IMG/VR virus record: IMGVR_UViG_3300008117_000011
Location: 1-64,000 of that record
Length of the DNA: 64,000 bases
Reading direction: 5' to 3' (one strand)
Position numbers and translations under genes: made by a program. Below, in pieces: positions 45,918-64,000 of the stretch; position 1 is the stretch's first letter; every line of letters begins with the position of its first letter. The notes below the pieces were generated by a model. The model was not told the DNA's origin, made no database searches, and worked only from the letters and a program-made list of their open reading frames with translations.

Positions 45918-46611
45918 ATTTTTCCATATATTTACTATCAATTATGATTGTCTTTGCTTTTTTAGTTACAAGATTTATTTGATCAAGAACAATTCTGTTG
46001 TTACCATCTCTATTTAAAACTAAAGTCCCAGAACCACCCGGTTCGTTATGAATATTTAAATCAATAACTTCCTTTGCCACATTTAATACCCAATTATGAA
46101 ATGATGTTTCACCAAAAAACATTTCATAATATGATCTAACATTCATAATAGATTTGTTTGTTGATGTACTAACCTCATCTACTATAAAATCACCATACCC
46201 ATAAGTAAAATCAATAAGTAATGTATCATAACTTTTTATATAATTAAATAATCGTTCAGATGTGTTATCCGTGTATTGAAATTCTGTTGTCTTTTCTTTA
46301 TTTTCTCGTGCGTCATATTTTGCAACTAAAATTATTTGTCTTTTTTGTGGGTCTATTGTCACATCACACCACCAGGTATTATCCCAATATTCTACTTCCT
46401 CGGTAAACATTTCACTTCCGTGATCTTCTACTAATTTTATTATAAAATCTTCAAAGTAATCTAAAATAGGAACTTTAAATCCTTTTTCAGACCAAAATGC
46501 TGATGGAACATATTCAATTCTTTCAGAATACATATCAATATTAACCCCAATAGGTCCAATTGGATTAAGATATGCCATAAGTGCTTTAAATGTATTTTTA
46601 TAATTCATCAT
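45910..46611 (-). CDS. Tandem-array paralogue 6 (DUF6878-like, most diverged)
   Basis: FKALMAYL N-terminus; FTYGYGD; PGGSGTL. Confidence 0.65.
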   Translation of the reverse strand: MMNYKNTFKALMAYLNPIGPIGVNIDMYSERIEYVPSAFWSEKGFKVPILDYFEDFIIKLVEDHGSEMFTEEVEYWDNTWWCDVTIDPQKRQIILVAKYDARENKEKTTEFQYTDNTSERLFNYIKSYDTLLIDFTYGYGDFIVDEVSTSTNKSIMNVRSYYEMFFGETSFHNWVLNVAKEVIDLNIHNEPGGSGTLVLNRDGNNRIVLDQINLVTKKAKTIIIDSKYMEKYD

Positions 46612-47308
46612 TAAAATTATCTAGTGTTATTTGAATATTCATATCTGTAGGTTGATATTCTTCTTCAAATTCATATCCATCAATTAATACTTTACCATTT
46701 GCGTAAACAATAATTCTACCTTTAAAACCATTTTCACCATTCCAATAAAGATTTACATTACGTTTCATAATATCGTTTACAATGACCCAGTATCTATCTT
46801 CATCTTCACTATCAATTCTTGCGTCTATATCGTTTACATAAGCTTCAAATACTTCACCGTCATCCCATCTTCCATAAAAATGTAATTCAAGTTTTTTAAT
46901 AATATCATCTTCAAATATGTCATAAATAATTTCTTTTGTTCTTGTAGTAATATCATCAAGATTTACCATTTCCTTTTTTTTAATTGATATTTCTTGCTTA
47001 CACTCACTTGTAAAAACAATTCTATTTTCAAAAGGATATATTAAAGCGTATAAATACCAAAGTTCACTATATTCATAATCGTTATATTTTCTAAATTCTG
47101 GTGTAATTTTATTTAGTATTTCACTAAAAATTGAGATAATTGTGTCCGGAGGAGTTACAAGTGATTTTTGTCCGTCACTTTTTCTAAAGTAAAAATGCTT
47201 GTTCCAGTCTGGTTCAATTGTGTTTACATCAAATGGAATATCTGTGTCTACAGTTTTTACTTTTAGACCTTTAAAATACGAAAAAAACATTTTTAATTTA
47301 TTCTTCAT
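46598..47308 (-). CDS. Tandem-array paralogue 5 (DUF6878-like)
   Basis: MKNKLKMFFSYFKG; FYGRWDDGEV; YWNGENGFKG. Confidence 0.7.
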   Translation of the reverse strand: MKNKLKMFFSYFKGLKVKTVDTDIPFDVNTIEPDWNKHFYFRKSDGQKSLVTPPDTIISIFSEILNKITPEFRKYNDYEYSELWYLYALIYPFENRIVFTSECKQEISIKKKEMVNLDDITTRTKEIIYDIFEDDIIKKLELHFYGRWDDGEVFEAYVNDIDARIDSEDEDRYWVIVNDIMKRNVNLYWNGENGFKGRIIVYANGKVLIDGYEFEEEYQPTDMNIQITLDNFNDEL

Positions 47309-47993
47309 CTTCTTGTTTTAAATTATCTAGTGTAACTACAATGTCTAAACTTTCGGTAACATCATCATTTGTATTCCATTCGTGCATAACTTCAATATGG
47401 TTTCTTGTAACTTCAATTGTTCCTTGGGATCCTTCATTTATCTCCCAACCACCAAAATCTTCAAGTAACTGATAACAAATATTTTCAATTTCTCTAGTTA
47501 TTGTTCCAGATTTTTTTCTTGAAGAATAACTATCGTGAACTTGTCCACTATCGCCACCACCATCGTAAGTTATTTCAAGTGAATCAATTCCTTCTTTATC
47601 TAAAAATTTATCAAATTCTTCAAAATACTGAGAAACACTTTCACCATCTTCATCCCTATCATAATATATTCCAGAATCTTCTGTTCCATACTGAGTAAAA
47701 TCTGTACTTTCAAAAACTAATCTATCTGGATATATTGTCCCATCAACAGTAAAGTAATCACTTCCATCACCATAACTTCCAAGCCCACCATCATATAAAT
47801 CTTCAGCGTACAATTCAGCGATATCATAAAATATTTGCTCCATATTTGATGACATCTGAAATCCTGGGTTTTTTGCACAAGTAAAATCTATATAATCAAT
47901 TGAATCTCCATCATTATAAAATTGTATTGTAAAATCAATGTTACAATTTAGACCTCTAACATACCCTAAAAGGGCTTTAAATTTTTTATTCAT
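47298..47993 (-). CDS. Tandem-array paralogue 4 (DUF6878-like, intact motifs)
   Basis: YDGGGDSGQV...FGGWEINEGSQGTI. Confidence 0.75.
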   Translation of the reverse strand: MNKKFKALLGYVRGLNCNIDFTIQFYNDGDSIDYIDFTCAKNPGFQMSSNMEQIFYDIAELYAEDLYDGGLGSYGDGSDYFTVDGTIYPDRLVFESTDFTQYGTEDSGIYYDRDEDGESVSQYFEEFDKFLDKEGIDSLEITYDGGGDSGQVHDSYSSRKKSGTITREIENICYQLLEDFGGWEINEGSQGTIEVTRNHIEVMHEWNTNDDVTESLDIVVTLDNLKQEDEE

Positions 47994-48681
47994 AATCTTC
48001 TATATTATTTGGTGTTAATTCTATTCTCATATTACTCGGAAGTAATCTTTCTTGATGGTGTTTGTAGCTTACTTCTATTTTATTCTTTTCTATTCTCACG
48101 CTACCACTAACTCCGTCAATTCCCCATTCAATAGATTGATCTACAACATCCATAATGTTTTGAGCTATATCATAATATTTCTCTTCAATATTTGAGTCTA
48201 ATTCATAAATGTTTTTTTCATCACCATTTATATTCAAATTTGTAACTTCACCTTCATCTACACCCATCCAAAAATCAATTTCAATAAAATTATTATCGTC
48301 TTTTATATGTTTTTCTAATTCAACAATAGCCCAATCCTGCAATCTTTTTAAATATGTTTTTTTTTCTTTTTTTTCTGTAAATTTTTGATAGTCTTTGGCG
48401 GTAACAATTATTTGATTATCAAATGGTCTAATAGTAATACTTAAAATCCAATAATCAGAATACTCCCTTGAAACATTGTCTAAAATTTCTCTTTTTAATT
48501 TTCTACTAAAAAGTGATTTTATTGCATTGTTAATTGTTAAATTCGTATTCGTTTCTTTACCATCAATCATACAAAGTCCGTCATCATTAAATTCCCAATC
48601 AACCATATCAAATTCTATATCGGCTCGTGGTTTATTAAAACCCCTAAAATAGGCTAATATCATTTTTAATTTATTTTTCAT
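47986..48681 (-). CDS. Tandem-array paralogue 3 (DUF6878-like)
   Basis: MKNKLKMILAYFRG; FWMGVDEGEV; WGIDGVSG. Confidence 0.7.
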   Translation of the reverse strand: MKNKLKMILAYFRGFNKPRADIEFDMVDWEFNDDGLCMIDGKETNTNLTINNAIKSLFSRKLKREILDNVSREYSDYWILSITIRPFDNQIIVTAKDYQKFTEKKEKKTYLKRLQDWAIVELEKHIKDDNNFIEIDFWMGVDEGEVTNLNINGDEKNIYELDSNIEEKYYDIAQNIMDVVDQSIEWGIDGVSGSVRIEKNKIEVSYKHHQERLLPSNMRIELTPNNIEDYE

Positions 48682-49366
48682 CCGTATCATCAAAAAAATC
48701 TGGCGTTATTGTAATGTCCATATCTGTATTGCCCCATTCAACAAGTCTGTTCTCAAGGTCAAGGAAAATATCATCACCCCATATTGTGATATCTCCAGTA
48801 AAACCACCATCATCGGTCCAGTATTTTCCATAATTTTTTGACATTAACTCGTATGTTACATCGTGAAATAACATATCAAGTTCATTTGTTGTTTTAATAA
48901 ACTTGTCATCAAAAAGAATATTAAAAATTTCAACATCCCAAATACCTCTAAAATCAAACTGAATTTTTGTTAAATTATTTTCTTCTTCAATTTCGGTTAT
49001 CTTATCCTGGAATTCTTCAGATAAATCAGAAAACTCCATTTGTAGTTGTTCTGGAACTGAATTTGCGTATTTGCACTCACTTGTAAAATGTATCTCATTT
49101 TCAAATGGATAAATACTAACTTCTAATGACCACCAATCATCTTCGTTATAATCATTATAATGATGAAATGTTGGCATAAGTTTTTTAATAACCTCTTCTA
49201 TAATATCACGAATTGGTTTTGCCGGTTCTATAAACTTTCTAGTACCACCTAAAGATATATCACTAAACTCTTCAATTGTGTTATAACCAAAAGTTACGTT
49301 GAAAAACAACTCCTCTTGTTTAAACCCTCTAAAATATGCAAAAAGTGCTTTTAATTTATTTTTCAT
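48671..49366 (-). CDS. Tandem-array paralogue 2 (DUF6878-like)
   Basis: MKNKLKALFAYFRG; FRGIWD; YWTDDGGFTG. Confidence 0.7.
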   Translation of the reverse strand: MKNKLKALFAYFRGFKQEELFFNVTFGYNTIEEFSDISLGGTRKFIEPAKPIRDIIEEVIKKLMPTFHHYNDYNEDDWWSLEVSIYPFENEIHFTSECKYANSVPEQLQMEFSDLSEEFQDKITEIEEENNLTKIQFDFRGIWDVEIFNILFDDKFIKTTNELDMLFHDVTYELMSKNYGKYWTDDGGFTGDITIWGDDIFLDLENRLVEWGNTDMDITITPDFFDDTDEK

Positions 49367-50031
49367 TCGTTTAACATATCTTCGGTTATTTCAATTGGGT
49401 CCTGACAATCGTTCCAGACTCTCTGCTGCCAAGTTTGTTCTATTGTAATCATTTTTGTTGTTCCATAATACTCAGCAATTTCAAACTCACCTCTGGATCC
49501 GTCATCTATTTCCCATCCTCCAAATGCGGCTTCTAATCTGTCATAAAGATAATTTAATAGTTTTTCATATTCACCACCCCATCTTACAATTTCGGTTTGA
49601 CCATTAATTTCAATATCCTCGTGTATTTCACCGGAATCACCATAACCACTAAATTGTCCTTTTACAGATTCAATACCTTTTTCTTTAAGAAATTCTAAAA
49701 CTTCTTCATCTCTTATGTCATCAGAATATGTGTCAGGTTGTTCGTCAAAATTTTCACATCTAACACTATAAAACATTTTATTTTCAGATGGTTTTAAATC
49801 TAAAGTAATACTTTTATATTCTGTTTCACTATAAAGTTGTTCTATATCATATTCTTCAGCTAAAAATATTGCAATACCAGTTATTATATCTCTAATATTT
49901 CCTGGTACTGACATATTACTACTAAAGCTGTACCAGTCAACTTCTCCATCATAATATGCAAAAGAAAATGATATATTATCTTTCTTTAATGACTTAAAAA
50001 AAGACATTAGAACTTTAAATTTTTTTTTCAT
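49363..50031 (-). CDS. Tandem-array paralogue 1 (DUF6878-like, intact motifs)
   Basis: FSGYGDSGEI...FGGWEIDDGSRGEF. Confidence 0.75.
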   Translation of the reverse strand: MKKKFKVLMSFFKSLKKDNISFSFAYYDGEVDWYSFSSNMSVPGNIRDIITGIAIFLAEEYDIEQLYSETEYKSITLDLKPSENKMFYSVRCENFDEQPDTYSDDIRDEEVLEFLKEKGIESVKGQFSGYGDSGEIHEDIEINGQTEIVRWGGEYEKLLNYLYDRLEAAFGGWEIDDGSRGEFEIAEYYGTTKMITIEQTWQQRVWNDCQDPIEITEDMLNE

Positions 50032-53882: not shown

Positions 53883-54587
53883 TTAGATAAATTCAAGAAT
53901 ATTTGTCACCTGATCCCACTCAAAAGTAACCGGTTTGTTGCGAAATTCATATCTTCCATTAAGAACCGCAGCATTGATGAAATGTGTTTGACCATCAAAT
54001 ACATAACCAAACCCTTCGTGAATATGGCCAAAAATATTGATTTTGGGTCTAATCTCCTCAATTCTTTTAAGAAGTTCTTCGCAACCAACATTCATATTGC
54101 CATAACCAACATAATCAAGTTTACCATAAGGAGGTCCGTGAGTAATAAGAATGTCAGTTCCGGCCGGAATCATATCCCACTTCTCTTTAAGTTTTTCACC
54201 ACGAGGAAGATTAAATGCCCAGTTATGAAATTCTGGCTGCCAAGGAGTTCCCCATATTTTAAGCATGTCATCATACTCAACTTCACCTTCACCAAGAAAC
54301 ATAAAATCATCTTGTAGGTAATCAATATTTTTGTAACCGGTAAGAATACCTTTCACCTTCAATAAATCATCCTGGAAGCCAAAATCGTGGTTTCCGGCAA
54401 TAAAAATCTTATGGTCGTAATTATCAATTTTATCATACCAAGTTGCAAAATTTTCAATTTCGGTAAGATATCCTCTACTAGTAATATCACCAGCACAAAT
54501 AAGAATATCACCACCGGGTAAAAAACCATCTAGTTTATTATGTTTAGTGTGAGTATCACTAATACAAGTTATTTTCCATTTTTTCAT
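53883..54587 (-). CDS. Calcineurin-like metallophosphoesterase (MPPED-type)
   Basis: ISDTH, AGD, IAGNHD, ITHGPP, FGHIHE. Confidence 0.9.
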   Translation of the reverse strand: MKKWKITCISDTHTKHNKLDGFLPGGDILICAGDITSRGYLTEIENFATWYDKIDNYDHKIFIAGNHDFGFQDDLLKVKGILTGYKNIDYLQDDFMFLGEGEVEYDDMLKIWGTPWQPEFHNWAFNLPRGEKLKEKWDMIPAGTDILITHGPPYGKLDYVGYGNMNVGCEELLKRIEEIRPKINIFGHIHEGFGYVFDGQTHFINAAVLNGRYEFRNKPVTFEWDQVTNILEFI

Positions 54588-54609
54588 AATACAAATATAA
54601 TAAAAAAAA

Positions 54610-54705
54610 TTAGATTGGTAATTTAATTTTAGATAATAATTGATTTGAGACGTGGGTGTATATCTCAGTTGTTTTTACATTACTATGACCGGCTATTTTT
54701 TGTAT
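54610..54705 (-). pseudogene. C-terminal relic of a tyrosine recombinase (IntI/Xer-like box II)
   Basis: Hand translation IQKIAGHSNVKTTEIYTHVSNQLLSKIKLPI*; contains catalytic His and Tyr; in-frame TGA just upstream, no start. Confidence 0.85.
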
Positions 54706-54787
54706 TGGTCAAAAAACCAATATTTTCCCATTTTGTGATTAATTCATTTGAGTTTTGTTCTTTTAATGTTTTTAATAATTCTCCCAT
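54683..54787 (-). pseudogene. Truncated ORF fused out of frame onto the integrase relic
   Basis: MGELLKTLKEQNSNELITKWENIGFLT then runs into integrase DNA and stops. Confidence 0.45.
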
Positions 54788-54798
54788 AATTTTTTTTA

Positions 54799-55005
54799 TT
54801 AATTAATTTTTTCATATTTAGTTTCCACAGCTCTTAGAATATCGTCACTGACAAAACAATTATTTTTTATTGACCATATTGATTCCATTTTTAAGAAGGG
54901 TTCATAACCACTAATTAAAACAATGTATTCTTCCATTTTTAAACCTTTTGTAGTTTTTTTAGTTGTTGTTAATCTATAACAACCAGCGTTAAATAGTGTT
55001 TTCAT
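54799..55005 (-). CDS. Small hypothetical protein
   Basis: 68 aa, ATGA-coupled. Confidence 0.6.
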   Translation of the reverse strand: MKTLFNAGCYRLTTTKKTTKGLKMEEYIVLISGYEPFLKMESIWSIKNNCFVSDDILRAVETKYEKIN

Positions 55006-55295
55006 TTTTTATTTATTTTTAAAATTTCATTAAACATTTCTTTAGTAGTTTTACCAACAAAATTATCATATTTACCTTCTTTAATTTCCTTACTTGTTTG
55101 ATGTTGGTCAATACATAATAAAGCTAATGAATCTATAGACATAGGATATATTCCACCAATTAAATTTAATGTGTTATTTATTGGTAAGTTTTTAATAAAA
55201 CCATCTTTAAATAATACAAAATCTTCATCGGTTACCCAACAATCACAACCAAAGTCTATTATTCTATTTTTAATTAATTCTATCTTATCACTCAT
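55002..55295 (-). CDS. Hypothetical protein
   Basis: Start re-called at MSDKIELIK after a TATATTTG promoter near 55313-55320. Confidence 0.6.
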   Translation of the reverse strand: MSDKIELIKNRIIDFGCDCWVTDEDFVLFKDGFIKNLPINNTLNLIGGIYPMSIDSLALLCIDQHQTSKEIKEGKYDNFVGKTTKEMFNEILKINKK

Positions 55296-55363
55296 ATAAC
55301 CAGTTTTATTCACAAATATACTAATTTATTTTGATAATATCAACCCAATGCACAAAATACTAT

Positions 55364-55417
55364 GTATAACAAATGATAAACAACATTAAAACGATTGTTT
55401 ATCATCGGACGTTAGCA
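55364..55417 (+). mobile_element. attC-like site A (short)
   Basis: GTATAAC-AA-ATGATAAACAA-cattaaaacga-TTGTTTATCAT-CGGAC-GTTAGCA. Confidence 0.75.
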
Positions 55418-55693
55418 AACATTAGACTGTGCTATAATTTTCAACCGAAGTTCTTTTATAATACCATCCCATTTATTAGCCATATCAAAGCAATATTGTT
55501 TTTCTTTACTTGATACAGTTCTTCTATATCCATCACCAGTATCATAAATATATCTAATTGAATAGTGTTGGAAATTATCTCTTGCATATTGCCATTGTTC
55601 AAACAACGTCATTTCATCCCAACTCTTAACACAACGTTTGCTAACAAAGTATAAACGTAATGTTTTCAGTCTTCCAATCAATCTTTTTATCAT
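55412..55693 (-). CDS. Cassette-1 gene (starts in site B loop, stops in site A core)
   Basis: MIKRLIGRLKTLRLYFV-SKRC...NVC*; the stop is the TAA of TAAC. Confidence 0.7.
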   Translation of the reverse strand: MIKRLIGRLKTLRLYFVSKRCVKSWDEMTLFEQWQYARDNFQHYSIRYIYDTGDGYRRTVSSKEKQYCFDMANKWDGIIKELRLKIIAQSNVC

Positions 55694-55759
55694 AATTTTT
55701 TAGTTTTGTATTTCAAATTAAGTTCAGTTAAACACTACGTTTATACTCAACCGTTATGT
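55639..55759 (+). mobile_element. attC-like site B (long)
   Basis: TGCTAAC-AA-AGTATAAACGTAATG...CACTACGTTTATACT-CAACC-GTTATGT. Confidence 0.8.
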
Positions 55760-55966
55760 GTAATAAGTTTTGTCTGTTTCATCTGAAAATCCTTTACTAA
55801 CATTTATACAATCATTTTTATCACACCACTTCATCCCACACCAGTTTTTACAACGAACATTATTATCGCTCAATCCATCTAATACTTTTTCTATATCAGA
55901 CTTATTACCACACATAACAAAGTATAAACGTAATGTTTTCAGTTTTTCAATCAATCTTTTTATCAT
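55754..55966 (-). CDS. Cassette-2 gene (Cys-rich; starts in site C loop, stops in site B core)
   Basis: MIKRLIEKLKTLRLYFV-MCG...YYT*. Confidence 0.7.
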   Translation of the reverse strand: MIKRLIEKLKTLRLYFVMCGNKSDIEKVLDGLSDNNVRCKNWCGMKWCDKNDCINVSKGFSDETDKTYYT

Positions 55967-56031
55967 AATTTCAAGTTTTGTATTTCAATTTAAGTTCAGT
56001 TAAGCACTACGTTTATACTCAACCGTTATAC
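55912..56031 (+). mobile_element. attC-like site C (long, near-copy of B)
   Basis: ACATAAC-AA-AGTATAAACGTAATG...CACTACGTTTATACT-CAACC-GTTATAC. Confidence 0.8.
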
Positions 56032-56043
56032 TCAATAAAAAAA

Positions 56044-56139
56044 TTATTTTAAGTTTTTAAGAGCCATAAACCCACAATATATTGCACCTAAACCACATAA
56101 AACCATTACAGCCAATAATATAATTTTAACTACTATCAT
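56044..56139 (-). CDS. Cassette-3 gene, 31 aa TM peptide
   Basis: MIVVKIILLAVMVLCGLGAIYCGFMALKNLK read by hand. Confidence 0.55.
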   Translation of the reverse strand: MIVVKIILLAVMVLCGLGAIYCGFMALKNLK

Positions 56140-56179
56140 TTTTTTTAATTTTTTAATTTGTAAATAATTTTTTAACTAA

Positions 56180-56233
56180 GTATAACAAAGAATATGTGTC
56201 ATTAAAACGAACACATATTCTCAACCGTTATAT
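56180..56233 (+). mobile_element. attC-like site D (short)
   Basis: GTATAAC-AA-AGAATATGTGT-cattaaaacga-ACACATATTCT-CAACC-GTTATAT. Confidence 0.75.
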
Positions 56234-56297
56234 ATACCTTACCGGTTGTTAATATTTTTTTAAATCCCATAATGTAAATATAGTAGTATTTATTGAT

Positions 56298-56891
56298 ATG
56301 AAAAAGTTTATATTATTTTTATTTTTAGTTTTTCCTTTTGTTTCTTTATCACAAAAAAAATTAAGAGATAGTGTCATTGTAAATGCTGACATATTCAAAA
56401 TCATTTATTCAGAAAAACTACAACAACCTCTTTCTGTAAAATATAATGTTCAATGTCCTTCTGGATCTGCGTCAAGAAAAGGTCTTGATTTTTTTACTTG
56501 TGATTCAATATTAACTTCAGATGGTAAGGATTATGATAACAATGTTTGGGATAAAGGTCATATGGCACCTGCCGCGGATTTTAATTGTACAAGAGATCTA
56601 ATGAAAAAAACTTTCACTTATTTAAATTGTACTTTACAACATCAAGATCTTAATAGAACCACTTGGAGGCTTTTAGAAACATATGAAAGATCGTTAGCTT
56701 TAAAATATAAAGTAGTTTCGGTTGAGGTTATTTGTGAATTTACTAAATCCTCTAAAGTGTTACCTTCAGGTGCAACTATACCCGATGGTTATTATAAAAT
56801 AATTAAATATAATAACACAACCGAAACCTATTATTTCAAAAACGAAAAACCTTCTTCAACTGATTATAAAAAATATCAAGTTAAAGGTTGA
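56298..56891 (+). CDS. Secreted DNA/RNA non-specific endonuclease (NucA/EndoG family)
   Basis: Signal peptide; WDKGHMAPAAD...TFTYLN..LQ...LN..TW..LE. Confidence 0.85.
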   Translation: MKKFILFLFLVFPFVSLSQKKLRDSVIVNADIFKIIYSEKLQQPLSVKYNVQCPSGSASRKGLDFFTCDSILTSDGKDYDNNVWDKGHMAPAADFNCTRDLMKKTFTYLNCTLQHQDLNRTTWRLLETYERSLALKYKVVSVEVICEFTKSSKVLPSGATIPDGYYKIIKYNNTTETYYFKNEKPSSTDYKKYQVKG

Positions 56892-57270
56892 TCTCAAACC
56901 GGGATTTCATCGTTTGAATCTTATCTTCCGGAACTCCGTGCTTATTCACACCTCCGTGTCTATTTTCAACAATTACTGAAAATACGGTGTATCCATATTC
57001 TTTGGCCATATTTACATAAGGCTCCATCTCCCACTCTTGTGTGAAAGTGTTTGACACAACAATTTTTGGGTATTCCAAAATCATATCCCCTTTAACCATT
57101 CCCTGACACCACTGGTGAGCATCTTTAATCTTTGTTGGGTCAAAATTGTAATTACCGGATTCACCAATAAAATACATATCAGCCTCATAGTGATTGCCAC
57201 CCAGTGTTTTTGCAAATGTTGATTTTCCGGATCCCGGAATTCCTCTTACGATATAAAGTACTTTTTCCAT
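56881..57270 (-). CDS. P-loop (AAA_33 / N4BP2-like) kinase
   Basis: VRGIPGSGKST, EADMYF, VSNTF, HGVP; start re-called at MEKVL. Confidence 0.85.
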   Translation of the reverse strand: MEKVLYIVRGIPGSGKSTFAKTLGGNHYEADMYFIGESGNYNFDPTKIKDAHQWCQGMVKGDMILEYPKIVVSNTFTQEWEMEPYVNMAKEYGYTVFSVIVENRHGGVNKHGVPEDKIQTMKSRFEINL

Positions 57271-57271
57271 C

Positions 57272-57481
57272 TTATTCTGATTTAAAGGTTTCGTTGTAGT
57301 ATTGTTCAACATTCCTATCCGCTTCCATTATAGCATCAACCCCTCCTTGCACATAGAAATTATATAAATGCTCCTTCTCCATTTCTTTGGCTTTTTCAAA
57401 TGCCTTTCCCATTTCTAATAAGTTGCCAGAATGTTTTATGTATTGCTCTTTTAACCATTCTACTGCTGTCTGTTTTTTCAT
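57272..57481 (-). CDS. 'KQTAVEWL...YYNETFKSE' small phage protein
   Basis: Common small-protein pattern in Bacteroidota phages. Confidence 0.7.
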   Translation of the reverse strand: MKKQTAVEWLKEQYIKHSGNLLEMGKAFEKAKEMEKEHLYNFYVQGGVDAIMEADRNVEQYYNETFKSE

Positions 57482-57493
57482 ATCATACACGTT

Positions 57494-57706
57494 TTAAAGG
57501 GTATCTCCTATTTGCCATTTACCACAATCAGCATAAAATCTAGTATAGTCCCATTTACCTATAAATACATATTCACACCTACCATTTCTATATTGTGTAA
57601 TCTCAGCACATATAGAAATTCCTTCTTTTATCTCCTTTCCATTATAATGATTGTCACAACTTACTAATATCATCATAATAAAAACTCCAATTAAGTATTT
57701 TCTCAT
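57494..57706 (-). CDS. Small lipoprotein
   Basis: MRKYLIGVFIMMILVSC lipobox. Confidence 0.65.
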   Translation of the reverse strand: MRKYLIGVFIMMILVSCDNHYNGKEIKEGISICAEITQYRNGRCEYVFIGKWDYTRFYADCGKWQIGDTL

Positions 57707-57825
57707 ATCACACACGTTTTATAAATTAGACATAAAAAAGCTGTAATTATACAACTCCCACATATAAACAAAAATCTTTTGTTGGGGGATAAATCTTCCC
57801 ATAACCATTTGTTAAATCTTTCCAT
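57703..57825 (-). CDS. 40 aa TM micro-protein
   Basis: MERFNKWLWEDLSPNKRFLFICGSCIITAFLCLIYKTCVI. Confidence 0.5.
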   Translation of the reverse strand: MERFNKWLWEDLSPNKRFLFICGSCIITAFLCLIYKTCVI

Positions 57826-57843
57826 ATCACACACGTTTTAAAA

Positions 57844-57906
57844 TTAAGGTCTATCACCCCAAGTAAACACTTGTTCTTCTAACCATTCTACTGCTGTCTT
57901 TTTCAT
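57844..57906 (-). pseudogene. Truncated KQTAVEWL paralogue, 20 aa
   Basis: MKKTAVEWLEEQVFTWGDRP*. Confidence 0.5.
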
Positions 57907-57921
57907 CTTATTCTGATTTAA

Positions 57922-57999
57922 TTATCTTTTCATTATGTTGTAACACATTGCGATTCCAGTAATCATTCCCATTAAAAAAAATATAATCTCTAGGTGCAT
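57922..57999 (-). CDS. 25 aa hydrophobic micro-protein
   Basis: MHLEIIFFLMGMITGIAMCYNIMKR. Confidence 0.45.
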   Translation of the reverse strand: MHLEIIFFLMGMITGIAMCYNIMKR

Positions 58000-58074
58000 C
58001 TTATTCTGATTTAAAGGTTAATAAATTTAATTACTACTAATGGTTGTTCTTCATTTTCTGATTTTATTCTCATC

Positions 58075-58221
58075 TTATTCTGATTTAAAGGTTAAAGGGT
58101 TTTCTGTCCAAATTGTGCCATCATCTTCTCTCATTGCTTCAATCATTGTCCAAGCAAACCAATAGGGTAAACTTACTGGAAGAAATATAATTGATAATAT
58201 TACTATTTGATATCTTTTCAT
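58075..58221 (-). CDS. 48 aa TM micro-protein ending TFKSE
   Basis: MKRYQIVILSIIFLPVSLPYWFAW...LTFKSE; TATATTTG 4 nt before ATG. Confidence 0.55.
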   Translation of the reverse strand: MKRYQIVILSIIFLPVSLPYWFAWTMIEAMREDDGTIWTENPLTFKSE

Positions 58222-61942: not shown

Positions 61943-62376
61943 CTGTAAATTTTAAATGGTGCTGTTCTATTTTTATAACCCTCAAAATCTTTTTTGAACT
62001 CTTCCAATCTTGGTTCTATTTCGTCCGATTTTATAATCCAAAACTGTGCTCCAGCCTGTAAAGCCTTTGCTTGTTCTTCCGGTTCATTTGAAGATGAAAT
62101 TATCCCAATAACTACGTGATTTCCGTATTGGAAGTTTATTCTTCTAATAAGTTCAATTCCATCAAACGAACTTCCAATTATGTTTAAATCAACAAACACA
62201 CATTCAGGTTTATCCTCTGTGTTGTTTTCTTCAAACCATTTTTTAAATCTTCTTTCCGCCTCGTCGGCGCTTGTTATAGAATTTAAAGAAAGACTTATGT
62301 CTAGTAGAGAACAGCTATCTTCAAATACCAAGTGGAAAAGATCCTCATCATCAACTAATAAAATAGATTCAATCAT
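61939..62376 (-). CDS. Stand-alone response-regulator receiver (CheY/Rcp1-like)
   Basis: ILLVDDED, VFVDLN (phospho-Asp), DGIELIR, IISSS, WIIK; no output domain. Confidence 0.9.
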   Translation of the reverse strand: MIESILLVDDEDLFHLVFEDSCSLLDISLSLNSITSADEAERRFKKWFEENNTEDKPECVFVDLNIIGSSFDGIELIRRINFQYGNHVVIGIISSSNEPEEQAKALQAGAQFWIIKSDEIEPRLEEFKKDFEGYKNRTAPFKIYR

Positions 62377-64000
62377 TTTTTTAATTTTATTTTCATTTTG
62401 GTCCCAATGTCATTCTTTTCACAAGAAACACTAAAACCGTGTTCATTTAATATCGCCAGACATATGTTTAAACCAAGTCCGGTTCCCGATTCCTTTTGTC
62501 CTTCTTTTCTAACATATGGTTTTGATAACAAGTTAAATTCTTCTTGTGTTAATCCTCTACCGTTATCCTGAACTACAAGGTCATTATTTTCTAAATAAAT
62601 ATGTACATATTTTGTATCGTTATCATTATATTTTAATCCGTTTCTAATAAGGTTGTCAACCGCAGTACAAAATAGTGGTTCGTTAACATCAATATTTAAT
62701 AATTCATCAATTTTAACTTGTGATTTATATGATGTTGTTGCAAGGTAATTTTCAAGTATTACTTTTAAATCACATTCTGTTTTATTTAAAACAACATCTT
62801 TTTTAACTAGATTTGTAAACTCAAACACACCTTTATACACTTTTTGTGTGTGTAACAATCCTTCTTTTAACATTTTTAATGGTGCTTCAAGTTTCAAATT
62901 AGAAATCACATCATCTGTTAATCTTCTTTCAAGGGATGAGATACCTCTTGGTATATATGTGTTAATTCCAGAATGCATATCGTGTCTTAATATTTTTGCG
63001 GCATGTTCTAGATATGTATTTTGTTTTTGTATTTGATTTGAGTTTTCAACTATTTCAGTAATATCCCTAGCAATTTTTAAAACTCTATATGGTTTGCCTT
63101 CATCATTTATAATTGGGTTATAAGTTGCACTTAAATGAATTGGTGACCCATCTTTTTTCTTTCTAATTATTTCCCCACTATAATACTTCCCTTCTTTTAA
63201 TTTTTTCCAAAAGTTTTTATATTCTTTTGAATTTATATCTTCATCATATAAGAATATACTGTGGTGTTTACCTTTTATTTCCTCATTTGTATATCCCATT
63301 GCGTCTAAAAAAGAATTATTTGCATAGCAAATTTCACCATCAATAGTGAATTCAATAACAGGACTTGATCTATTGATAGCATCCATTCTATTTGTTAATT
63401 CTGCTTCTTTTTGAATAACTTTTTTTGTTAAGGTGTCTCCTTCTTTTACCGAAAAAGCAAATGAATAAAGTGATGCTAGCATTTGAGCAAAATTTACTTC
63501 ATATTCTTTCCATTCCCTACTGGTCAAACTTTCAATACATATAACACCAAGAACATCTCCTTTATGAATGATTGGGACATCAAGCATTGATTTGATTCCA
63601 AGCGGTTTCAAATAACTTTCTGTAAAACAAGATGTCGCATGGTGCGTTTCGGCATTATTTGCAACTATTATTGGATTAATTAATAGTGCCAAAAAATACT
63701 CCTGGAAATCTTTTTTAAATAGTTCAATATCTTGATACCACTTATGCTCCGCTTTTATATATAACTGATGACAAATAATTGAAGTTCTATCGTTATTATA
63801 TAACCAAATAGAACACCTATCAGTATTAATTGTTTGTGTAACATCTTGAGTTAATGCCTTTGCTCCTTCATTTACATTTCCTTCATAAAATAAAGAATTG
63901 TGAGATTGTGAGATAATAACATCATTTAGTTCTTTTTGGTACAAACTAATAAATTTTGTTTTTTTACTTTTTTTGATGTACTCAAAAATGTTTACAATAA
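62373..64000 (-). CDS. Sensor histidine kinase GAF-PAS-HisKA-HATPase, 5' end outside window
   Basis: GAF (RCSIWL...GIKSMLDVPI..G.VLGVIC.E), PAS (ANNSFL..MGY...GKHHSIF), ILRHDM, NLIRNGLKY, DNGRG, GTGLGL; frame open to 64000. Confidence 0.92.
   Translation of the reverse strand, partial: IVNIFEYIKKSKKTKFISLYQKELNDVIISQSHNSLFYEGNVNEGAKALTQDVTQTINTDRCSIWLYNNDRTSIICHQLYIKAEHKWYQDIELFKKDFQEYFLALLINPIIVANNAETHHATSCFTESYLKPLGIKSMLDVPIIHKGDVLGVICIESLTSREWKEYEVNFAQMLASLYSFAFSVKEGDTLTKKVIQKEAELTNRMDAINRSSPVIEFTIDGEICYANNSFLDAMGYTNEEIKGKHHSIFLYDEDINSKEYKNFWKKLKEGKYYSGEIIRKKKDGSPIHLSATYNPIINDEGKPYRVLKIARDITEIVENSNQIQKQNTYLEHAAKILRHDMHSGINTYIPRGISSLERRLTDDVISNLKLEAPLKMLKEGLLHTQKVYKGVFEFTNLVKKDVVLNKTECDLKVILENYLATTSYKSQVKIDELLNIDVNEPLFCTAVDNLIRNGLKYNDNDTKYVHIYLENNDLVVQDNGRGLTQEEFNLLSKPYVRKEGQKESGTGLGLNICLAILNEHGFSVSCEKNDIGTKMKIKLKK

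What the first reader, a model, noticed from the sequence alone, without database searches (positions are those of the whole stretch)
55412..55966. Cassette genes are completed by the recombination sites themselves
Seen: both ORFs begin inside the loop of a long site (B or C) and take a near-identical 17 aa N-terminus (MIKRLI..LKTLRLYFV) from its arm. They then read through the GTT crossover (the Val codon) into unrelated sequence and stop at the TAA of the next site's TAAC. The genes share the integrase's strand, whereas typical cassette ORFs point away from intI. Inference: the att site supplies the translation start and a constant leader, so captured sequence can become a new micro-protein. 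That would be a site-specific route to de novo gene birth.
Basis: partly seen in the sequence, partly recalled or inferred. Interest (0 to 1): 0.8.

Follow-up and report, generated by a model that had tools for sequence, protein, structure and literature searches.

The report
Phage integron-like cassettes with built-in gene starts
The two small genes do begin inside hairpin recombination sites, but each site and its gene travel together as one mobile cassette of a previously undescribed integron-like system of large environmental phages, so the site is part of the gene rather than a resident adaptor that completes captured DNA.

Summary
Both minus-strand ORFs (55693-55412 and 55966-55754) start in the loop of a ~115-nt hairpin site. 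They take a near-identical 17-residue N-terminus from it and stop at the TAA of the next site's TAAC.

The window holds four co-oriented hairpin sites (56230-55367) followed by a 31-codon remnant of a tyrosine recombinase (54705-54613). In about 70 related phage contigs, the intact 266-aa Xer-like integrase sits just downstream of such arrays on the same strand, behind a conserved attI-like site.

Four lines of evidence place the crossover at the TAAC end of each site, not at the GTT Val codon: exact indels, flank conservation (80:3), complementarity between each cassette's two ends, and 46 cassettes found with different neighbours. Each cassette is therefore [site with gene start + ORF + TAA].

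Cultured Polaribacter phages Freya_9 and Freya_10 differ by exactly one such cassette at the attI-like site.

The system works like an integron but fails integron membership: the integrase lacks the IntI-specific domain and the cassette ORFs are inverted. De novo gene birth is untested.

The parts
56183..56230 (-). Site D: short (48 nt) hairpin recombination site, TAAC-GGTT bulge-12 bp stem-loop TCGTTTTAATG-stem-T-GTTA. It heads the first cassette.
   Evidence: Same framework and loop as site A, with compensating arm changes.
56026..56227 (-). Cassette D (202 nt), running from the C of D's TAAC to the TAA of C's TAAC. It contains site D and a 31-aa hydrophobic ORF (56139..56044) that has its own ATG.
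   Evidence: The 10 nt after GTTA pair with the cassette's own end. The circular-junction fold is -13.4 kcal/mol against -10.7 for the integrated form.
55915..56028 (-). Site C: long (114 nt) hairpin site of the 'B-type'. Its loop holds the ATG (55966-55964) and its 3' arm encodes ..TLRLYFV.
55754..56025 (-). Cassette C (272 nt): site C plus the 70-aa ORF 55966..55754. The stop TAA is the TAA of site B's TAAC.
   Evidence: A 15-bp extended helix forms only when the cassette's own ends are joined (-14.8 against -8.8 kcal/mol).
55642..55756 (-). Site B: long (115 nt) hairpin site, 96% identical to C. Its loop holds the ATG at 55693-55691.
   Evidence: It is 94% identical to a site in the 462-kb uncultured phage LR756500.1.
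55412..55753 (-). Cassette B (342 nt): site B plus the 93-aa ORF 55693..55412. The stop TAA is the TAA of site A's TAAC.
   Evidence: the same unit is found at 93-95% identity in L071, L074 and L060 with different neighbours on both sides.: -23.7 against -18.8 kcal/mol.
55367..55414 (-). Site A: short (48 nt) hairpin site that heads a fourth, truncated cassette. It is the commonest short site type in related phages.
54706..55366 (-). Sequence between site A and the integrase remnant. It carries two small ORFs (55313..55002, 103 aa; 55005..54799, 68 aa). It occupies the place where related phages have the last cassette end, the attI-like site and the first ~235 integrase codons.
   Evidence: No attI-like motif is present and the ORFs match no family. 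Whether this stretch belongs to cassette A is unresolved.
54613..54705 (-). Remnant of the array's tyrosine recombinase. Only the last 31 codons are present, including the catalytic-Tyr motif ..KTTEIYTHVSN..LPI.
   Evidence: tblastn gives 97% identity to residues 236-266 of the L081 integrase. L175 and L176 show the same remnant.

Best explanation
The region is the decayed end of an integron-like gene-cassette platform carried by large phages of (probably) Flavobacteriia.

Each cassette has this layout, read on the ORF strand:
- C, then a 3-4-nt bulge (G[G/T]TT);
- an imperfect hairpin of ~48, ~88 or ~115-130 nt, ending in GTTA;
- 6 variable nt followed by GT, then the ORF body;
- AT, then 6 nt complementary to those six, then TAA.

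In intact relatives a 266-aa Xer-like tyrosine recombinase is encoded just downstream of the array on the same strand. About 50-65 nt before its ATG lies a conserved attI-like site (YTAAC|TAnnATATAT).

Cassettes are gained and lost as whole units by exchange at TAA|C. On the other strand this is G|TTA, the canonical integron crossover when the integrase is drawn pointing left. By analogy with integron attC sites and with CTX-phage/XerCD, recombination probably uses the folded ORF-sense single strand (inferred).

In the long sites the loop carries the cassette gene's start codon, and perhaps its promoter (not shown). The loop and the 3' arm therefore encode the first 15-32 residues, GTT is read as Val, and the next three codons and the last codons plus stop are shaped by the site's extended helix.

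The 17-aa leader of the two window ORFs is thus the coding face of their own B-type sites. It is kept open but is not conserved as a peptide.

Shown: the anatomy, the unit boundaries, mobility, the linkage to the integrase, and frame conservation. Inferred: catalysis by this integrase, the single-strand substrate, and transcription and translation from the loop.
For: Integrase:
- phmmer with IntI1 and XerD finds a 266-aa recombinase next to arrays (E about 1e-30). It is always on the same strand, 160-480 nt after the last site.
- The catalytic R-K-H-R-H-Y residues are kept (A3).
- In an integrase-anchored sample of 68 loci, 235 sites lie upstream on the same strand, 8 upstream on the opposite strand and 5 downstream.
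- An attI-like motif is present in 55 of 66 loci.

Unit boundaries:
- Indels lie at CTAAC| between L059 and L089/L101, and at T|AAC between L033 and L089/L101.
- Freya_9 and Freya_10 differ by one 307-nt [site+ORF] unit inserted exactly at the attI-like site, with AAC direct repeats and 100% identical flanks.
- The Freya_1-10 arrays range from 0 to 4.9 kb.
- Own-end complementarity scores 7.8 of 10 against 5.1-5.4 for the neighbouring cassette's end.
- Flank asymmetry is 80:3.
- 46 cassettes recur with both flanks changed.

Structure: covariation; the circular-junction form and the ORF-sense strand are the more stable folds.

Coding:
- 66 of 100 long sites of many unrelated types have an ATG in the loop that reads out through the site, 48 of them with GTT as a codon.
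- 96 of 101 B-type copies are open through GTT.
- Bodies have pN/pS of 0.11-0.28, and Met-less bodies are constrained from codon 5.
- The longest ORF lies on the integrase strand in 134 cassettes against 15.
Against:
- The window itself has no working integrase or attI, so its array may be inert.
- The integrase lacks the IntI-specific domain that integron integrases use to read folded attC sites.
- For the window's 93-aa family, Met28 is invariant, codons 5-11 after GTT show 0 synonymous and 39 non-synonymous differences, and one homologue (P0009) shares only the part from Met28 onward. Its true start could therefore be Met28.
- The loop-encoded part of the leader shows no purifying selection (synonymous:non-synonymous 6:24 against 16:59 possible).
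- No promoter could be recognised in the loops.
- How one site type came to head about 30 unrelated bodies is unexplained.
Confidence: 0.78

Rival explanations
1. The crossover is the GTT Val codon. A resident site donates start and leader to whatever sequence is inserted after it, so new micro-proteins arise at each capture.
For: The same B-type leader is fused in frame to about 30 unrelated bodies, several without any Met. Leader subtypes and body families are found in different combinations. P0009 carries the window's 93-aa body behind a different leader. L005, L014 and L035 carry a fusion of another ORF onto half a site. Three site pairs share the upstream flank but not the downstream one.
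Against: Site-type pairs with the downstream flank kept and the upstream flank changed number 80, against 3 the other way. All resolvable recent indels lie at the TAAC end. Each cassette's two ends are complementary only under the [site+ORF] boundaries. 46 [site+ORF] units moved intact. The P0009 junction is not at GTT.
Confidence: 0.07
2. PeSL-like regulatory modules. The hairpins are RNA or transcriptional elements (terminator/promoter/5' leader). Shuffling is by ordinary homologous recombination between them, as in T4-type hyperplastic regions. The integrase serves only lysogeny.
For: G-T (G-U) wobbles favour folding of the sense strand, as expected for RNA. The loops carry gene starts. PeSL-mediated shuffling and mini-circles are documented (PMC2839356, PMC4122927). 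The Freya integrase was read as a sign of a temperate lifestyle (PMC8776804).
Against: No sigma-70-type promoter excess and no terminator-like sites were found, and the loop motif is not used elsewhere in the phage. Arrays sit strictly upstream of the integrase in one orientation (235:8:5) and abut a conserved attI-like site where a single cassette is inserted or absent. Junctions fall on the same 3-5 nt even between dissimilar sites. A local RNA hairpin does not predict complementarity between the two ends of a cassette.
Confidence: 0.08
3. The leader frame is open but not translated. Real starts lie downstream (Met18 in the 70-aa ORF, Met28 in the 93-aa ORF), and the in-frame continuity is a by-product of DNA-level constraints of the site.
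For: Met28 is invariant and the preceding segment is relaxed in the 93-aa family. Several bodies begin with ATG right after GTT. dN/dS is about 1 in the loop-encoded leader.
Against: Bodies without any Met are under strong purifying selection from codon 5. A homologue of the 70-aa body has Ser in place of Met18. Diverged leader subfamilies differ by 3-nt indels and keep the frame. 48 of 66 loop-start ORFs across unrelated site types use the same frame.
Confidence: 0.15

Closest known systems
Integrons (IntI integrase, attI, attC gene cassettes), including CALINs reported in virulent phages (Qi et al. 2023, PMC9892861)
   Same: Arrays of single-gene cassettes, each with one imperfect hairpin site bounded by AAC...GTT. 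The crossover is consistent with G|TT at the integrase-distal end of the site. A non-hairpin attI-like site lies next to a tyrosine recombinase, and a new cassette sits there. One site type is reused on unrelated genes, as with Vibrio VCRs. The window's array without a working integrase is a CALIN in the descriptive sense. P12002L_attC1 of Qi et al. has the same frame and the same loop TCGTTTTAATG as sites A and D.
   Different: The integrase is Xer-like, 266 aa, without the IntI-specific insertion, and scores below the NCBIfam integron-integrase cut-off. Cassette ORFs are inverted relative to canonical cassettes and run toward the integrase. They start inside their own site instead of being promoterless and ending before it. 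The R helix formed by a cassette's two ends is ~12-15 bp instead of 7. The unpaired bases form a 3-4-nt bulge next to the cleaved box. P12002L_attC1 was the only one of six phage sites that IntI1 failed to recombine. The system is found in phage contigs and almost never in bacterial genomes.
PeSL (promoter-early stem-loop) cassettes of T4-type phages (PMC2839356, PMC4122927)
   Same: Small repeated stem-loop-plus-expression-signal modules flank ORFan genes in hyperplastic regions of large phages and mark the points of gene gain, loss and swapping. Circular intermediates are proposed.
   Different: PeSLs are a terminator followed by a sigma-70 promoter, act through homologous recombination, have no dedicated recombinase or attI, and do not encode part of the protein. 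Here the gene start lies inside the hairpin loop, junctions are site-specific, and a recombinase is linked.
Xer recombination of folded single-stranded phage DNA (CTX-phi attP hairpin with XerCD/dif); from my own knowledge, not tested here
   Same: A Xer-type tyrosine recombinase without the IntI insertion acts on a hairpin formed by one DNA strand. This gives a precedent for the proposed chemistry.
   Different: CTX-phi integrates a whole phage genome at the host dif site using host enzymes. Here a phage-encoded enzyme would shuffle small cassettes within the phage genome.
Translation signals supplied by integron sites (ORF-11/attI1 and N-terminal fusions of aacA4-type cassettes); from my own knowledge
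   Same: Part of a recombination site is translated and can contribute a start or N-terminal residues to a cassette protein.
   Different: In those cases the donor is the resident attI or 5' conserved segment, across the crossover. Here the start and leader lie in the cassette's own site and move with it.

Membership tests
Integron | Integrase is an IntI: a tyrosine recombinase carrying the IntI-specific additional domain near patch III | tested here: not met
   Alignment A3: IntI1 residues ~209-258 have no counterpart. TIGR02249 scores 150 bits against a cut-off of 265 and matches in two stretches. The best model is the XerA/integron-integrase family NF040815 at 185 bits, below its cut-off of 220.
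Integron | Tyrosine-recombinase catalytic residues R-K-H-R-H-Y | tested here: met
   All are invariant in four phage integrases aligned with IntI1 and XerD. PF00589 matches at E about 1e-35. In the window only the last 31 codons survive.
Integron | attC: imperfect hairpin with conserved AAC...GTT ends, unpaired bases, a variable loop, and structure rather than sequence conserved | tested here: inconclusive
   Ends, size range (48-130 nt), bulge and covariation fit. The IntegronFinder/HattCI models could not be run here. HattCI did call one family member (P12002L_attC1) an attC in PMC9892861.
Integron | Sites are recombined by integron integrases | not testable with these tools
   Literature only: P12002L_attC1, which has the same loop and frame, was the one phage site not recombined by IntI1.
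Integron | Crossover at G|TT at the integrase-distal end of each site; a cassette runs from TT to G | tested here: met
   Indel junctions lie within GTTAG / T|AAC / AAC. Own-end complementarity and intact moved units agree with these boundaries. Resolution is 3-5 nt.
Integron | attI next to the integrase gene is the preferred insertion point | tested here: met
   A conserved YTAAC|TAnnATATAT lies 42-67 nt before the integrase ATG in 52 of the 55 motif-bearing loci (55 of 66 examined); in the other three it is 102 nt away. Freya_10 has one extra cassette exactly there compared with Freya_9. The motif is absent from the window.
Integron | Cassette ORFs are promoterless, point away from intI, and have the attC after the stop codon | tested here: not met
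   ORFs are co-directional with the integrase (134 against 15). The site precedes its ORF, and in 66 of 100 long sites it contains the ORF's start.
CALIN (cluster of attC sites lacking an integrase) | Two or more attC-type sites in one orientation with no functional integrase nearby | tested here: met
   Four co-oriented sites at 56230-55367. Only a 31-codon integrase remnant is present, and no other recombinase in 64 kb. This holds only if the sites are accepted as attC-like.
PeSL regulatory cassettes | Strong sigma-70-type early promoter adjacent to a stem-loop that acts as a terminator | tested here: not met
   Promoter-like sites are not above shuffled expectation and no terminator-like sites were found in 54500-57000. 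The hairpin encloses the start codon instead of preceding a promoter.
IS200/IS605-type single-strand transposons | HUH (Y1) transposase and two different subterminal hairpins per element | tested here: not met
   No such family was found among the 95 ORFs of the window. There is one hairpin per unit, and the linked enzyme is a tyrosine recombinase.

The most novel reading that the evidence does not exclude
The long sites may be portable 'expression heads': start codon, leader, a fixed reading frame through GTT, and possibly a promoter. A second, rarer exchange at the GTT end, or an unknown cassette-forming process, would join such a head in frame to new DNA. In that case the system would create, as well as shuffle, small phage proteins. 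This would explain why one head sits on about 30 unrelated bodies, why 48 of 66 loop-start sites share the same frame, and why some bodies have no start of their own.
Probability: 0.2. Interest if true: 0.9.

Novelty: new variant of a known kind. Interest (0 to 1): 0.78.

Why it matters
If the model holds, integron-type gene capture is not confined to bacteria with IntI enzymes. A Xer-like enzyme without the IntI insertion would run a cassette platform inside virulent or large phages. Its cassettes would be self-contained expression units whose recombination site is partly protein-coding.

Possible consequences:
- It offers a mechanism for the rapid turnover of small ORFan genes in phage genomes. 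These are candidate host-takeover or anti-defence proteins, though that function is untested.
- It offers a natural experiment on how integron integrases evolved from Xer.
- It shows how strongly a DNA structure can dictate the two ends of a protein.
- It is directly testable, because cultured Polaribacter phages (Freya and Danklef) already differ by 0 to about 12 such cassettes.

Tried and rejected
No read-level joints or transcript ends could be examined. The RNA runs found hold only 5-10% of the region's sampled words.
- Pfam on all 95 non-nested ORFs of at least 90 aa found no recombinase in the window. The remnant was found only by tblastn with the phage integrases.
- Promoter and terminator scans, and searches for the conserved loop motif elsewhere in the window, gave nothing above chance. 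A promoter in the loop therefore remains a guess.
- Rfam has no match in 54500-56500.
- The cassette proteins match no PHROG family. Among them, Pfam was run only on the 93-aa protein and found nothing.
- A capsid-targeting or signal function of the leader was considered and dropped. There is no conserved cleavage motif, the leader is not hydrophobic enough, and dN/dS is about 1.
- My first breakpoint histogram and the first block analysis were biased by having selected loci on the B-type site. I replaced them with flank-asymmetry, indel, own-end and integrase-anchored analyses.
- The ~12-kb stretch of LR756500.1 first fetched (L001) carries an array. No integrase was found in the 50-kb stretch fetched afterwards (L002); the rest of its 462 kb was not fetched.

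Full report
**What is in the window**

On the minus strand between 56230 and 55367 there are four hairpin sites built on one frame: TAAC, a 3-4-nt bulge G(G/T)TT, a stem, a loop, the other half of the stem, T, then GTTA.
- Sites D (56230-56183) and A (55414-55367) are 48 nt. They share the loop TCGTTTTAATG but have different arms that stay complementary.
- Sites C (56028-55915) and B (55756-55642) are ~115 nt and 96% identical to each other.

Three ORFs lie between the sites on the same strand.
- A 31-aa hydrophobic peptide (56139-56044) has its own ATG.
- The 70-aa ORF (55966-55754) has its ATG in the loop of C.
- The 93-aa ORF (55693-55412) has its ATG in the loop of B.

Both of the finding's ORFs read the 3' arm as ..KTLRLYFV with GTT as Val. 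Both stop on the TAA of the next site's TAAC.

**It is a widespread family, not a local oddity**

The 21-nt 3' arm of B and C occurs exactly in 15 IMG/VR loci, 83 metagenome loci (lakes, sea, sediment) and a single 4.8-kb contig among 185,579 species genomes. Site B is 94% identical to a site in the 462-kb uncultured phage LR756500.1, which has an array of at least nine such sites.

In 96 of 101 copies an ATG-initiated frame runs through GTT into an ORF of 30-105 codons. There are 57 distinct tails, falling into about 30 unrelated families. The other two frames mostly close within about 15 codons.

My hairpin finder located 261 sites in these loci, in three size classes of about 48, 88 and 115-130 nt. 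All have the extra bases on the 5' arm. Thirty contexts chosen only by the loop motif show strong covariation: 87.6% of cells are paired against 61% in shuffles, 77 double-change cells against 27, and 0 of 500 shuffles reach the observed value.

**The recombinase**

Pfam found no recombinase among the 95 ORFs of the window. Using IntI1 from plasmid R100 and E. coli XerD as probes, phmmer found a ~266-aa tyrosine recombinase beside arrays in L005, L006, L007, L020, L076 and L081. E-values reach 1e-30 to IntI1 and 1e-26 to XerD. It is always on the ORF strand, 160-480 nt after the last site.

tblastn with these proteins shows that the window keeps only the last 31 codons (54705-54613, 97% identity, including the catalytic-Tyr motif). 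The window's array has also lost its attI-like site.

The enzyme keeps R-K-H-R-H-Y but lacks the IntI-specific insertion. It scores below the curated cut-offs of both the integron-integrase model and the XerA/integron-integrase model.

**An independent sample anchored on the integrase**

The search for related loci returned 80 viral loci from contigs of up to 464 kb. In the 68 loci analysed:
- 235 sites lie upstream of the integrase on its strand, 8 upstream on the other strand and 5 downstream. Up to 17 sites occur in 8 kb.
- Only 1 of 210 unique sites is B-type, so this sample is independent of the first.
- An attI-like motif YTAAC|TAnnATATAT lies within 150 nt upstream of the integrase ATG in 55 of 66 loci (42-67 nt in 52 of them, 102 nt in three). 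Background is 80 of 1360 random windows.
- The longest frame of a cassette body lies on the integrase strand in 134 cases against 15.

**Where the crossover is**

This decides the interpretation. Five independent lines of evidence agree.
1. Indels between near-identical loci:
   - L059 against L089/L101: a 1647-nt insertion bounded by CTAAC.
   - L033 against L089/L101: a 490-nt insertion at T|AAC.
2. Cultured phages: Polaribacter phages Freya_9 and Freya_10 have 100% identical flanks and differ by one 307-nt unit.
   - The unit is a hairpin site with the start of gene Freya10_10 in its loop, plus that ORF.
   - It lies between ..TACCAAC and ACCCCTATAAC.. (the attI-like site 50 nt before the integrase) and is flanked by AAC direct repeats.
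   - Freya_1 to Freya_10 carry from 0 to 4.9 kb of array, and Danklef shares cassettes with them at 97% identity.
3. Flank inheritance: among pairs of similar sites in different loci, the downstream flank is kept and the upstream flank changed in 80 pairs. The reverse occurs in 3 pairs, all involving the very common A-type short site.
4. Own-end pairing:
   - The 10 nt after a site's GTTA are complementary to the 10 nt before the next TAAC, which is the cassette's own end. The score is 7.8 of 10, and about 40-45% of cassettes pair perfectly.
   - Pairing with the preceding cassette's end scores only 5.1-5.4, close to the random value of 5.2. The difference has p = 3e-15 and 1.5e-19 in the two samples.
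   - A G-T wobble recurs at position 7 in 107 of 150 cassettes.
   - Folding the window's cassettes with DNA parameters makes the joined-ends form more stable than the integrated form. The values are D -13.4 against -10.7, C -14.8 against -8.8 and B -23.7 against -18.8 kcal/mol. The ORF strand is more stable than its complement for sites D, C and B (A is about equal) and for all three joined-end forms.
5. Moved units: of 331 cassettes delimited as C...TAA, 46 recur at 90% identity or more over their full length in another locus with both neighbours different. These include the window's cassette B in L060, L071 and L074.

The unit is therefore [site + ORF + TAA]. The GTT that the ORFs read as Val is the inner end of their own site, not the crossover. 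Seen with the integrase pointing left, the geometry is that of an integron (attI, then cassettes each ending in their site, exchange at G|TT), but with the genes inverted.

**Is the loop ATG used?**

In favour:
- Frame conservation, as described above.
- Leader subfamilies that differ by 3-nt indels yet stay in frame.
- 66 of 100 long sites of many unrelated sequences have an ATG in the loop and an ORF of at least 25 codons beyond GTT, 48 of them in the GTT-codon frame. Leaders are 15-32 codons long.
- Protein bodies are under purifying selection (pN/pS 0.11-0.28).
- Met-less bodies are constrained immediately after the site. RKRCFEVY has 14 synonymous and 0 non-synonymous differences in codons 5-14.
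- A homologue of the 70-aa body has Ser where the window has Met18.

Against, or limiting:
- The loop-encoded leader residues evolve neutrally.
- For the 93-aa family, Met28 is invariant, the segment before it is relaxed, and P0009 shares only the part from Met28 onward behind a different leader.

I conclude that translation from the loop is likely in general (about 0.75) but is unproven for the 93-aa ORF.

The semi-conserved residues after Val (x-K/R-R/S/C) and the C-terminal ..NVC* or ..YYT* follow from the DNA helix (GTTA-N6-GT pairing with AT-N6-TAAC), not from any protein function.

**Comparison with known systems**

- The system works like an integron and the window's array is a CALIN in the descriptive sense. 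It fails two defining features of integrons: the IntI-type integrase and the canonical cassette polarity.
- Qi et al. 2023 reported CALINs in phages. Their P12002L_attC1 has the same frame and loop as sites A and D, and it was the only one of six sites that IntI1 did not recombine. This fits a different cognate enzyme.
- Bartlau et al. 2021 annotated the Freya, Danklef, Ingeline and Leef enzymes simply as integrases suggesting a temperate lifestyle, and reported Freya genome sizes ranging from 44.0 to 48.9 kb. In the passages of that paper I read, the size range is not attributed to a cassette array.
- PeSLs of T4-type phages are the nearest functional analogue in phages, but they lack site-specific junctions, a recombinase and coding overlap.
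- Four full-text searches on integrons or integron-like elements in phages and on PeSLs found no description of this platform. Absence from that library is not proof of novelty.

**Open points**

- How one site type came to head many unrelated bodies. This is the same puzzle as cassette genesis in integrons.
- Whether the loops hold promoters.
- Which strand is recombined.
- What the small proteins do.
- Whether sequence 55366-54706 is part of a fourth cassette.

Noticed in passing
L184 (MT732472.1 1-7000), L185, L186, L187: Cultured Polaribacter phages Freya_1 to Freya_10 differ by 0 to 4.9 kb of small-ORF cassettes immediately upstream of their integrase. Freya_9 and Freya_10 differ by exactly one 307-nt cassette at the attI-like site. 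Danklef phages share some cassettes at 97% identity. The published description treats the integrase only as a sign of a temperate lifestyle.
   Followed up: partly
PMC9892861 supplement (P12002L_attC1); compare window 55367-55414 and 56183-56230: The predicted attC 'P12002L_attC1' of Polaribacter phage P12002L has the same frame and the identical loop TCGTTTTAATG as window sites A and D. It was the only one of six phage sites that IntI1 failed to recombine.
   Followed up: partly
L056:1319-1366, L081:3746-3793, L088:1024-1071, L090:11038-11085: Between some adjacent sites the whole 'cassette body' is only ~20 nt: GTTAT-AGCA-TCGTTTTAATG-TGCT-ATAAC. This is the short-site loop flanked by inverted R boxes. 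These may be empty or minimal cassettes.
   Followed up: no
L005:~790-1070 (= L014, L035): The 5' half of a B-type site is replaced by the 3' part of another ORF. This gives a 95-aa in-frame fusion (MTVKELIEQLSKLDQ... + LIEKLKTLRLYFV + RKRCFEVYF...), a natural example of exon-like shuffling inside a site.
   Followed up: no
window 57263-58221 (- strand): A run of small ORFs has two repeated elements: a ~25-nt junction that encodes a C-terminal ..TFKSE* followed by the next ATG (seen at three ATG starts), and a conserved 5' element TAAAACGTGTGTGATATG (seen at three others). No hairpin was noticed by eye, though none was searched for. This may be a second kind of shuffling module.
   Followed up: partly
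window 46598-50031 (- strand): Five consecutive 222-236-aa ORFs are distant paralogues of one another (blastp 21-33% identity, E 1e-7 to 1e-37). They form a tandem gene family with no Pfam match.
   Followed up: partly
window 62373-63944 (-), and elsewhere in the window: The phage encodes a GAF-PAS-histidine-kinase protein. Somewhere in the 64 kb it also encodes a response-regulator receiver, an ECF-type sigma factor, an FKBP isomerase and an HD-domain protein, which is an unusual regulatory load for a phage.
   Followed up: no
window 56298-56891 (+): A secreted-looking DNA/RNA non-specific endonuclease (PF01223, E 2e-24) is encoded divergently, right at the outer edge of the cassette array.
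   Followed up: no
L018 (SLPE01000151.1, 4.8 kb): The only hit in 185,579 species genomes is a short contig binned into a Candidatus Izimaplasma MAG. It is probably a phage fragment mis-binned into the MAG.
   Followed up: no
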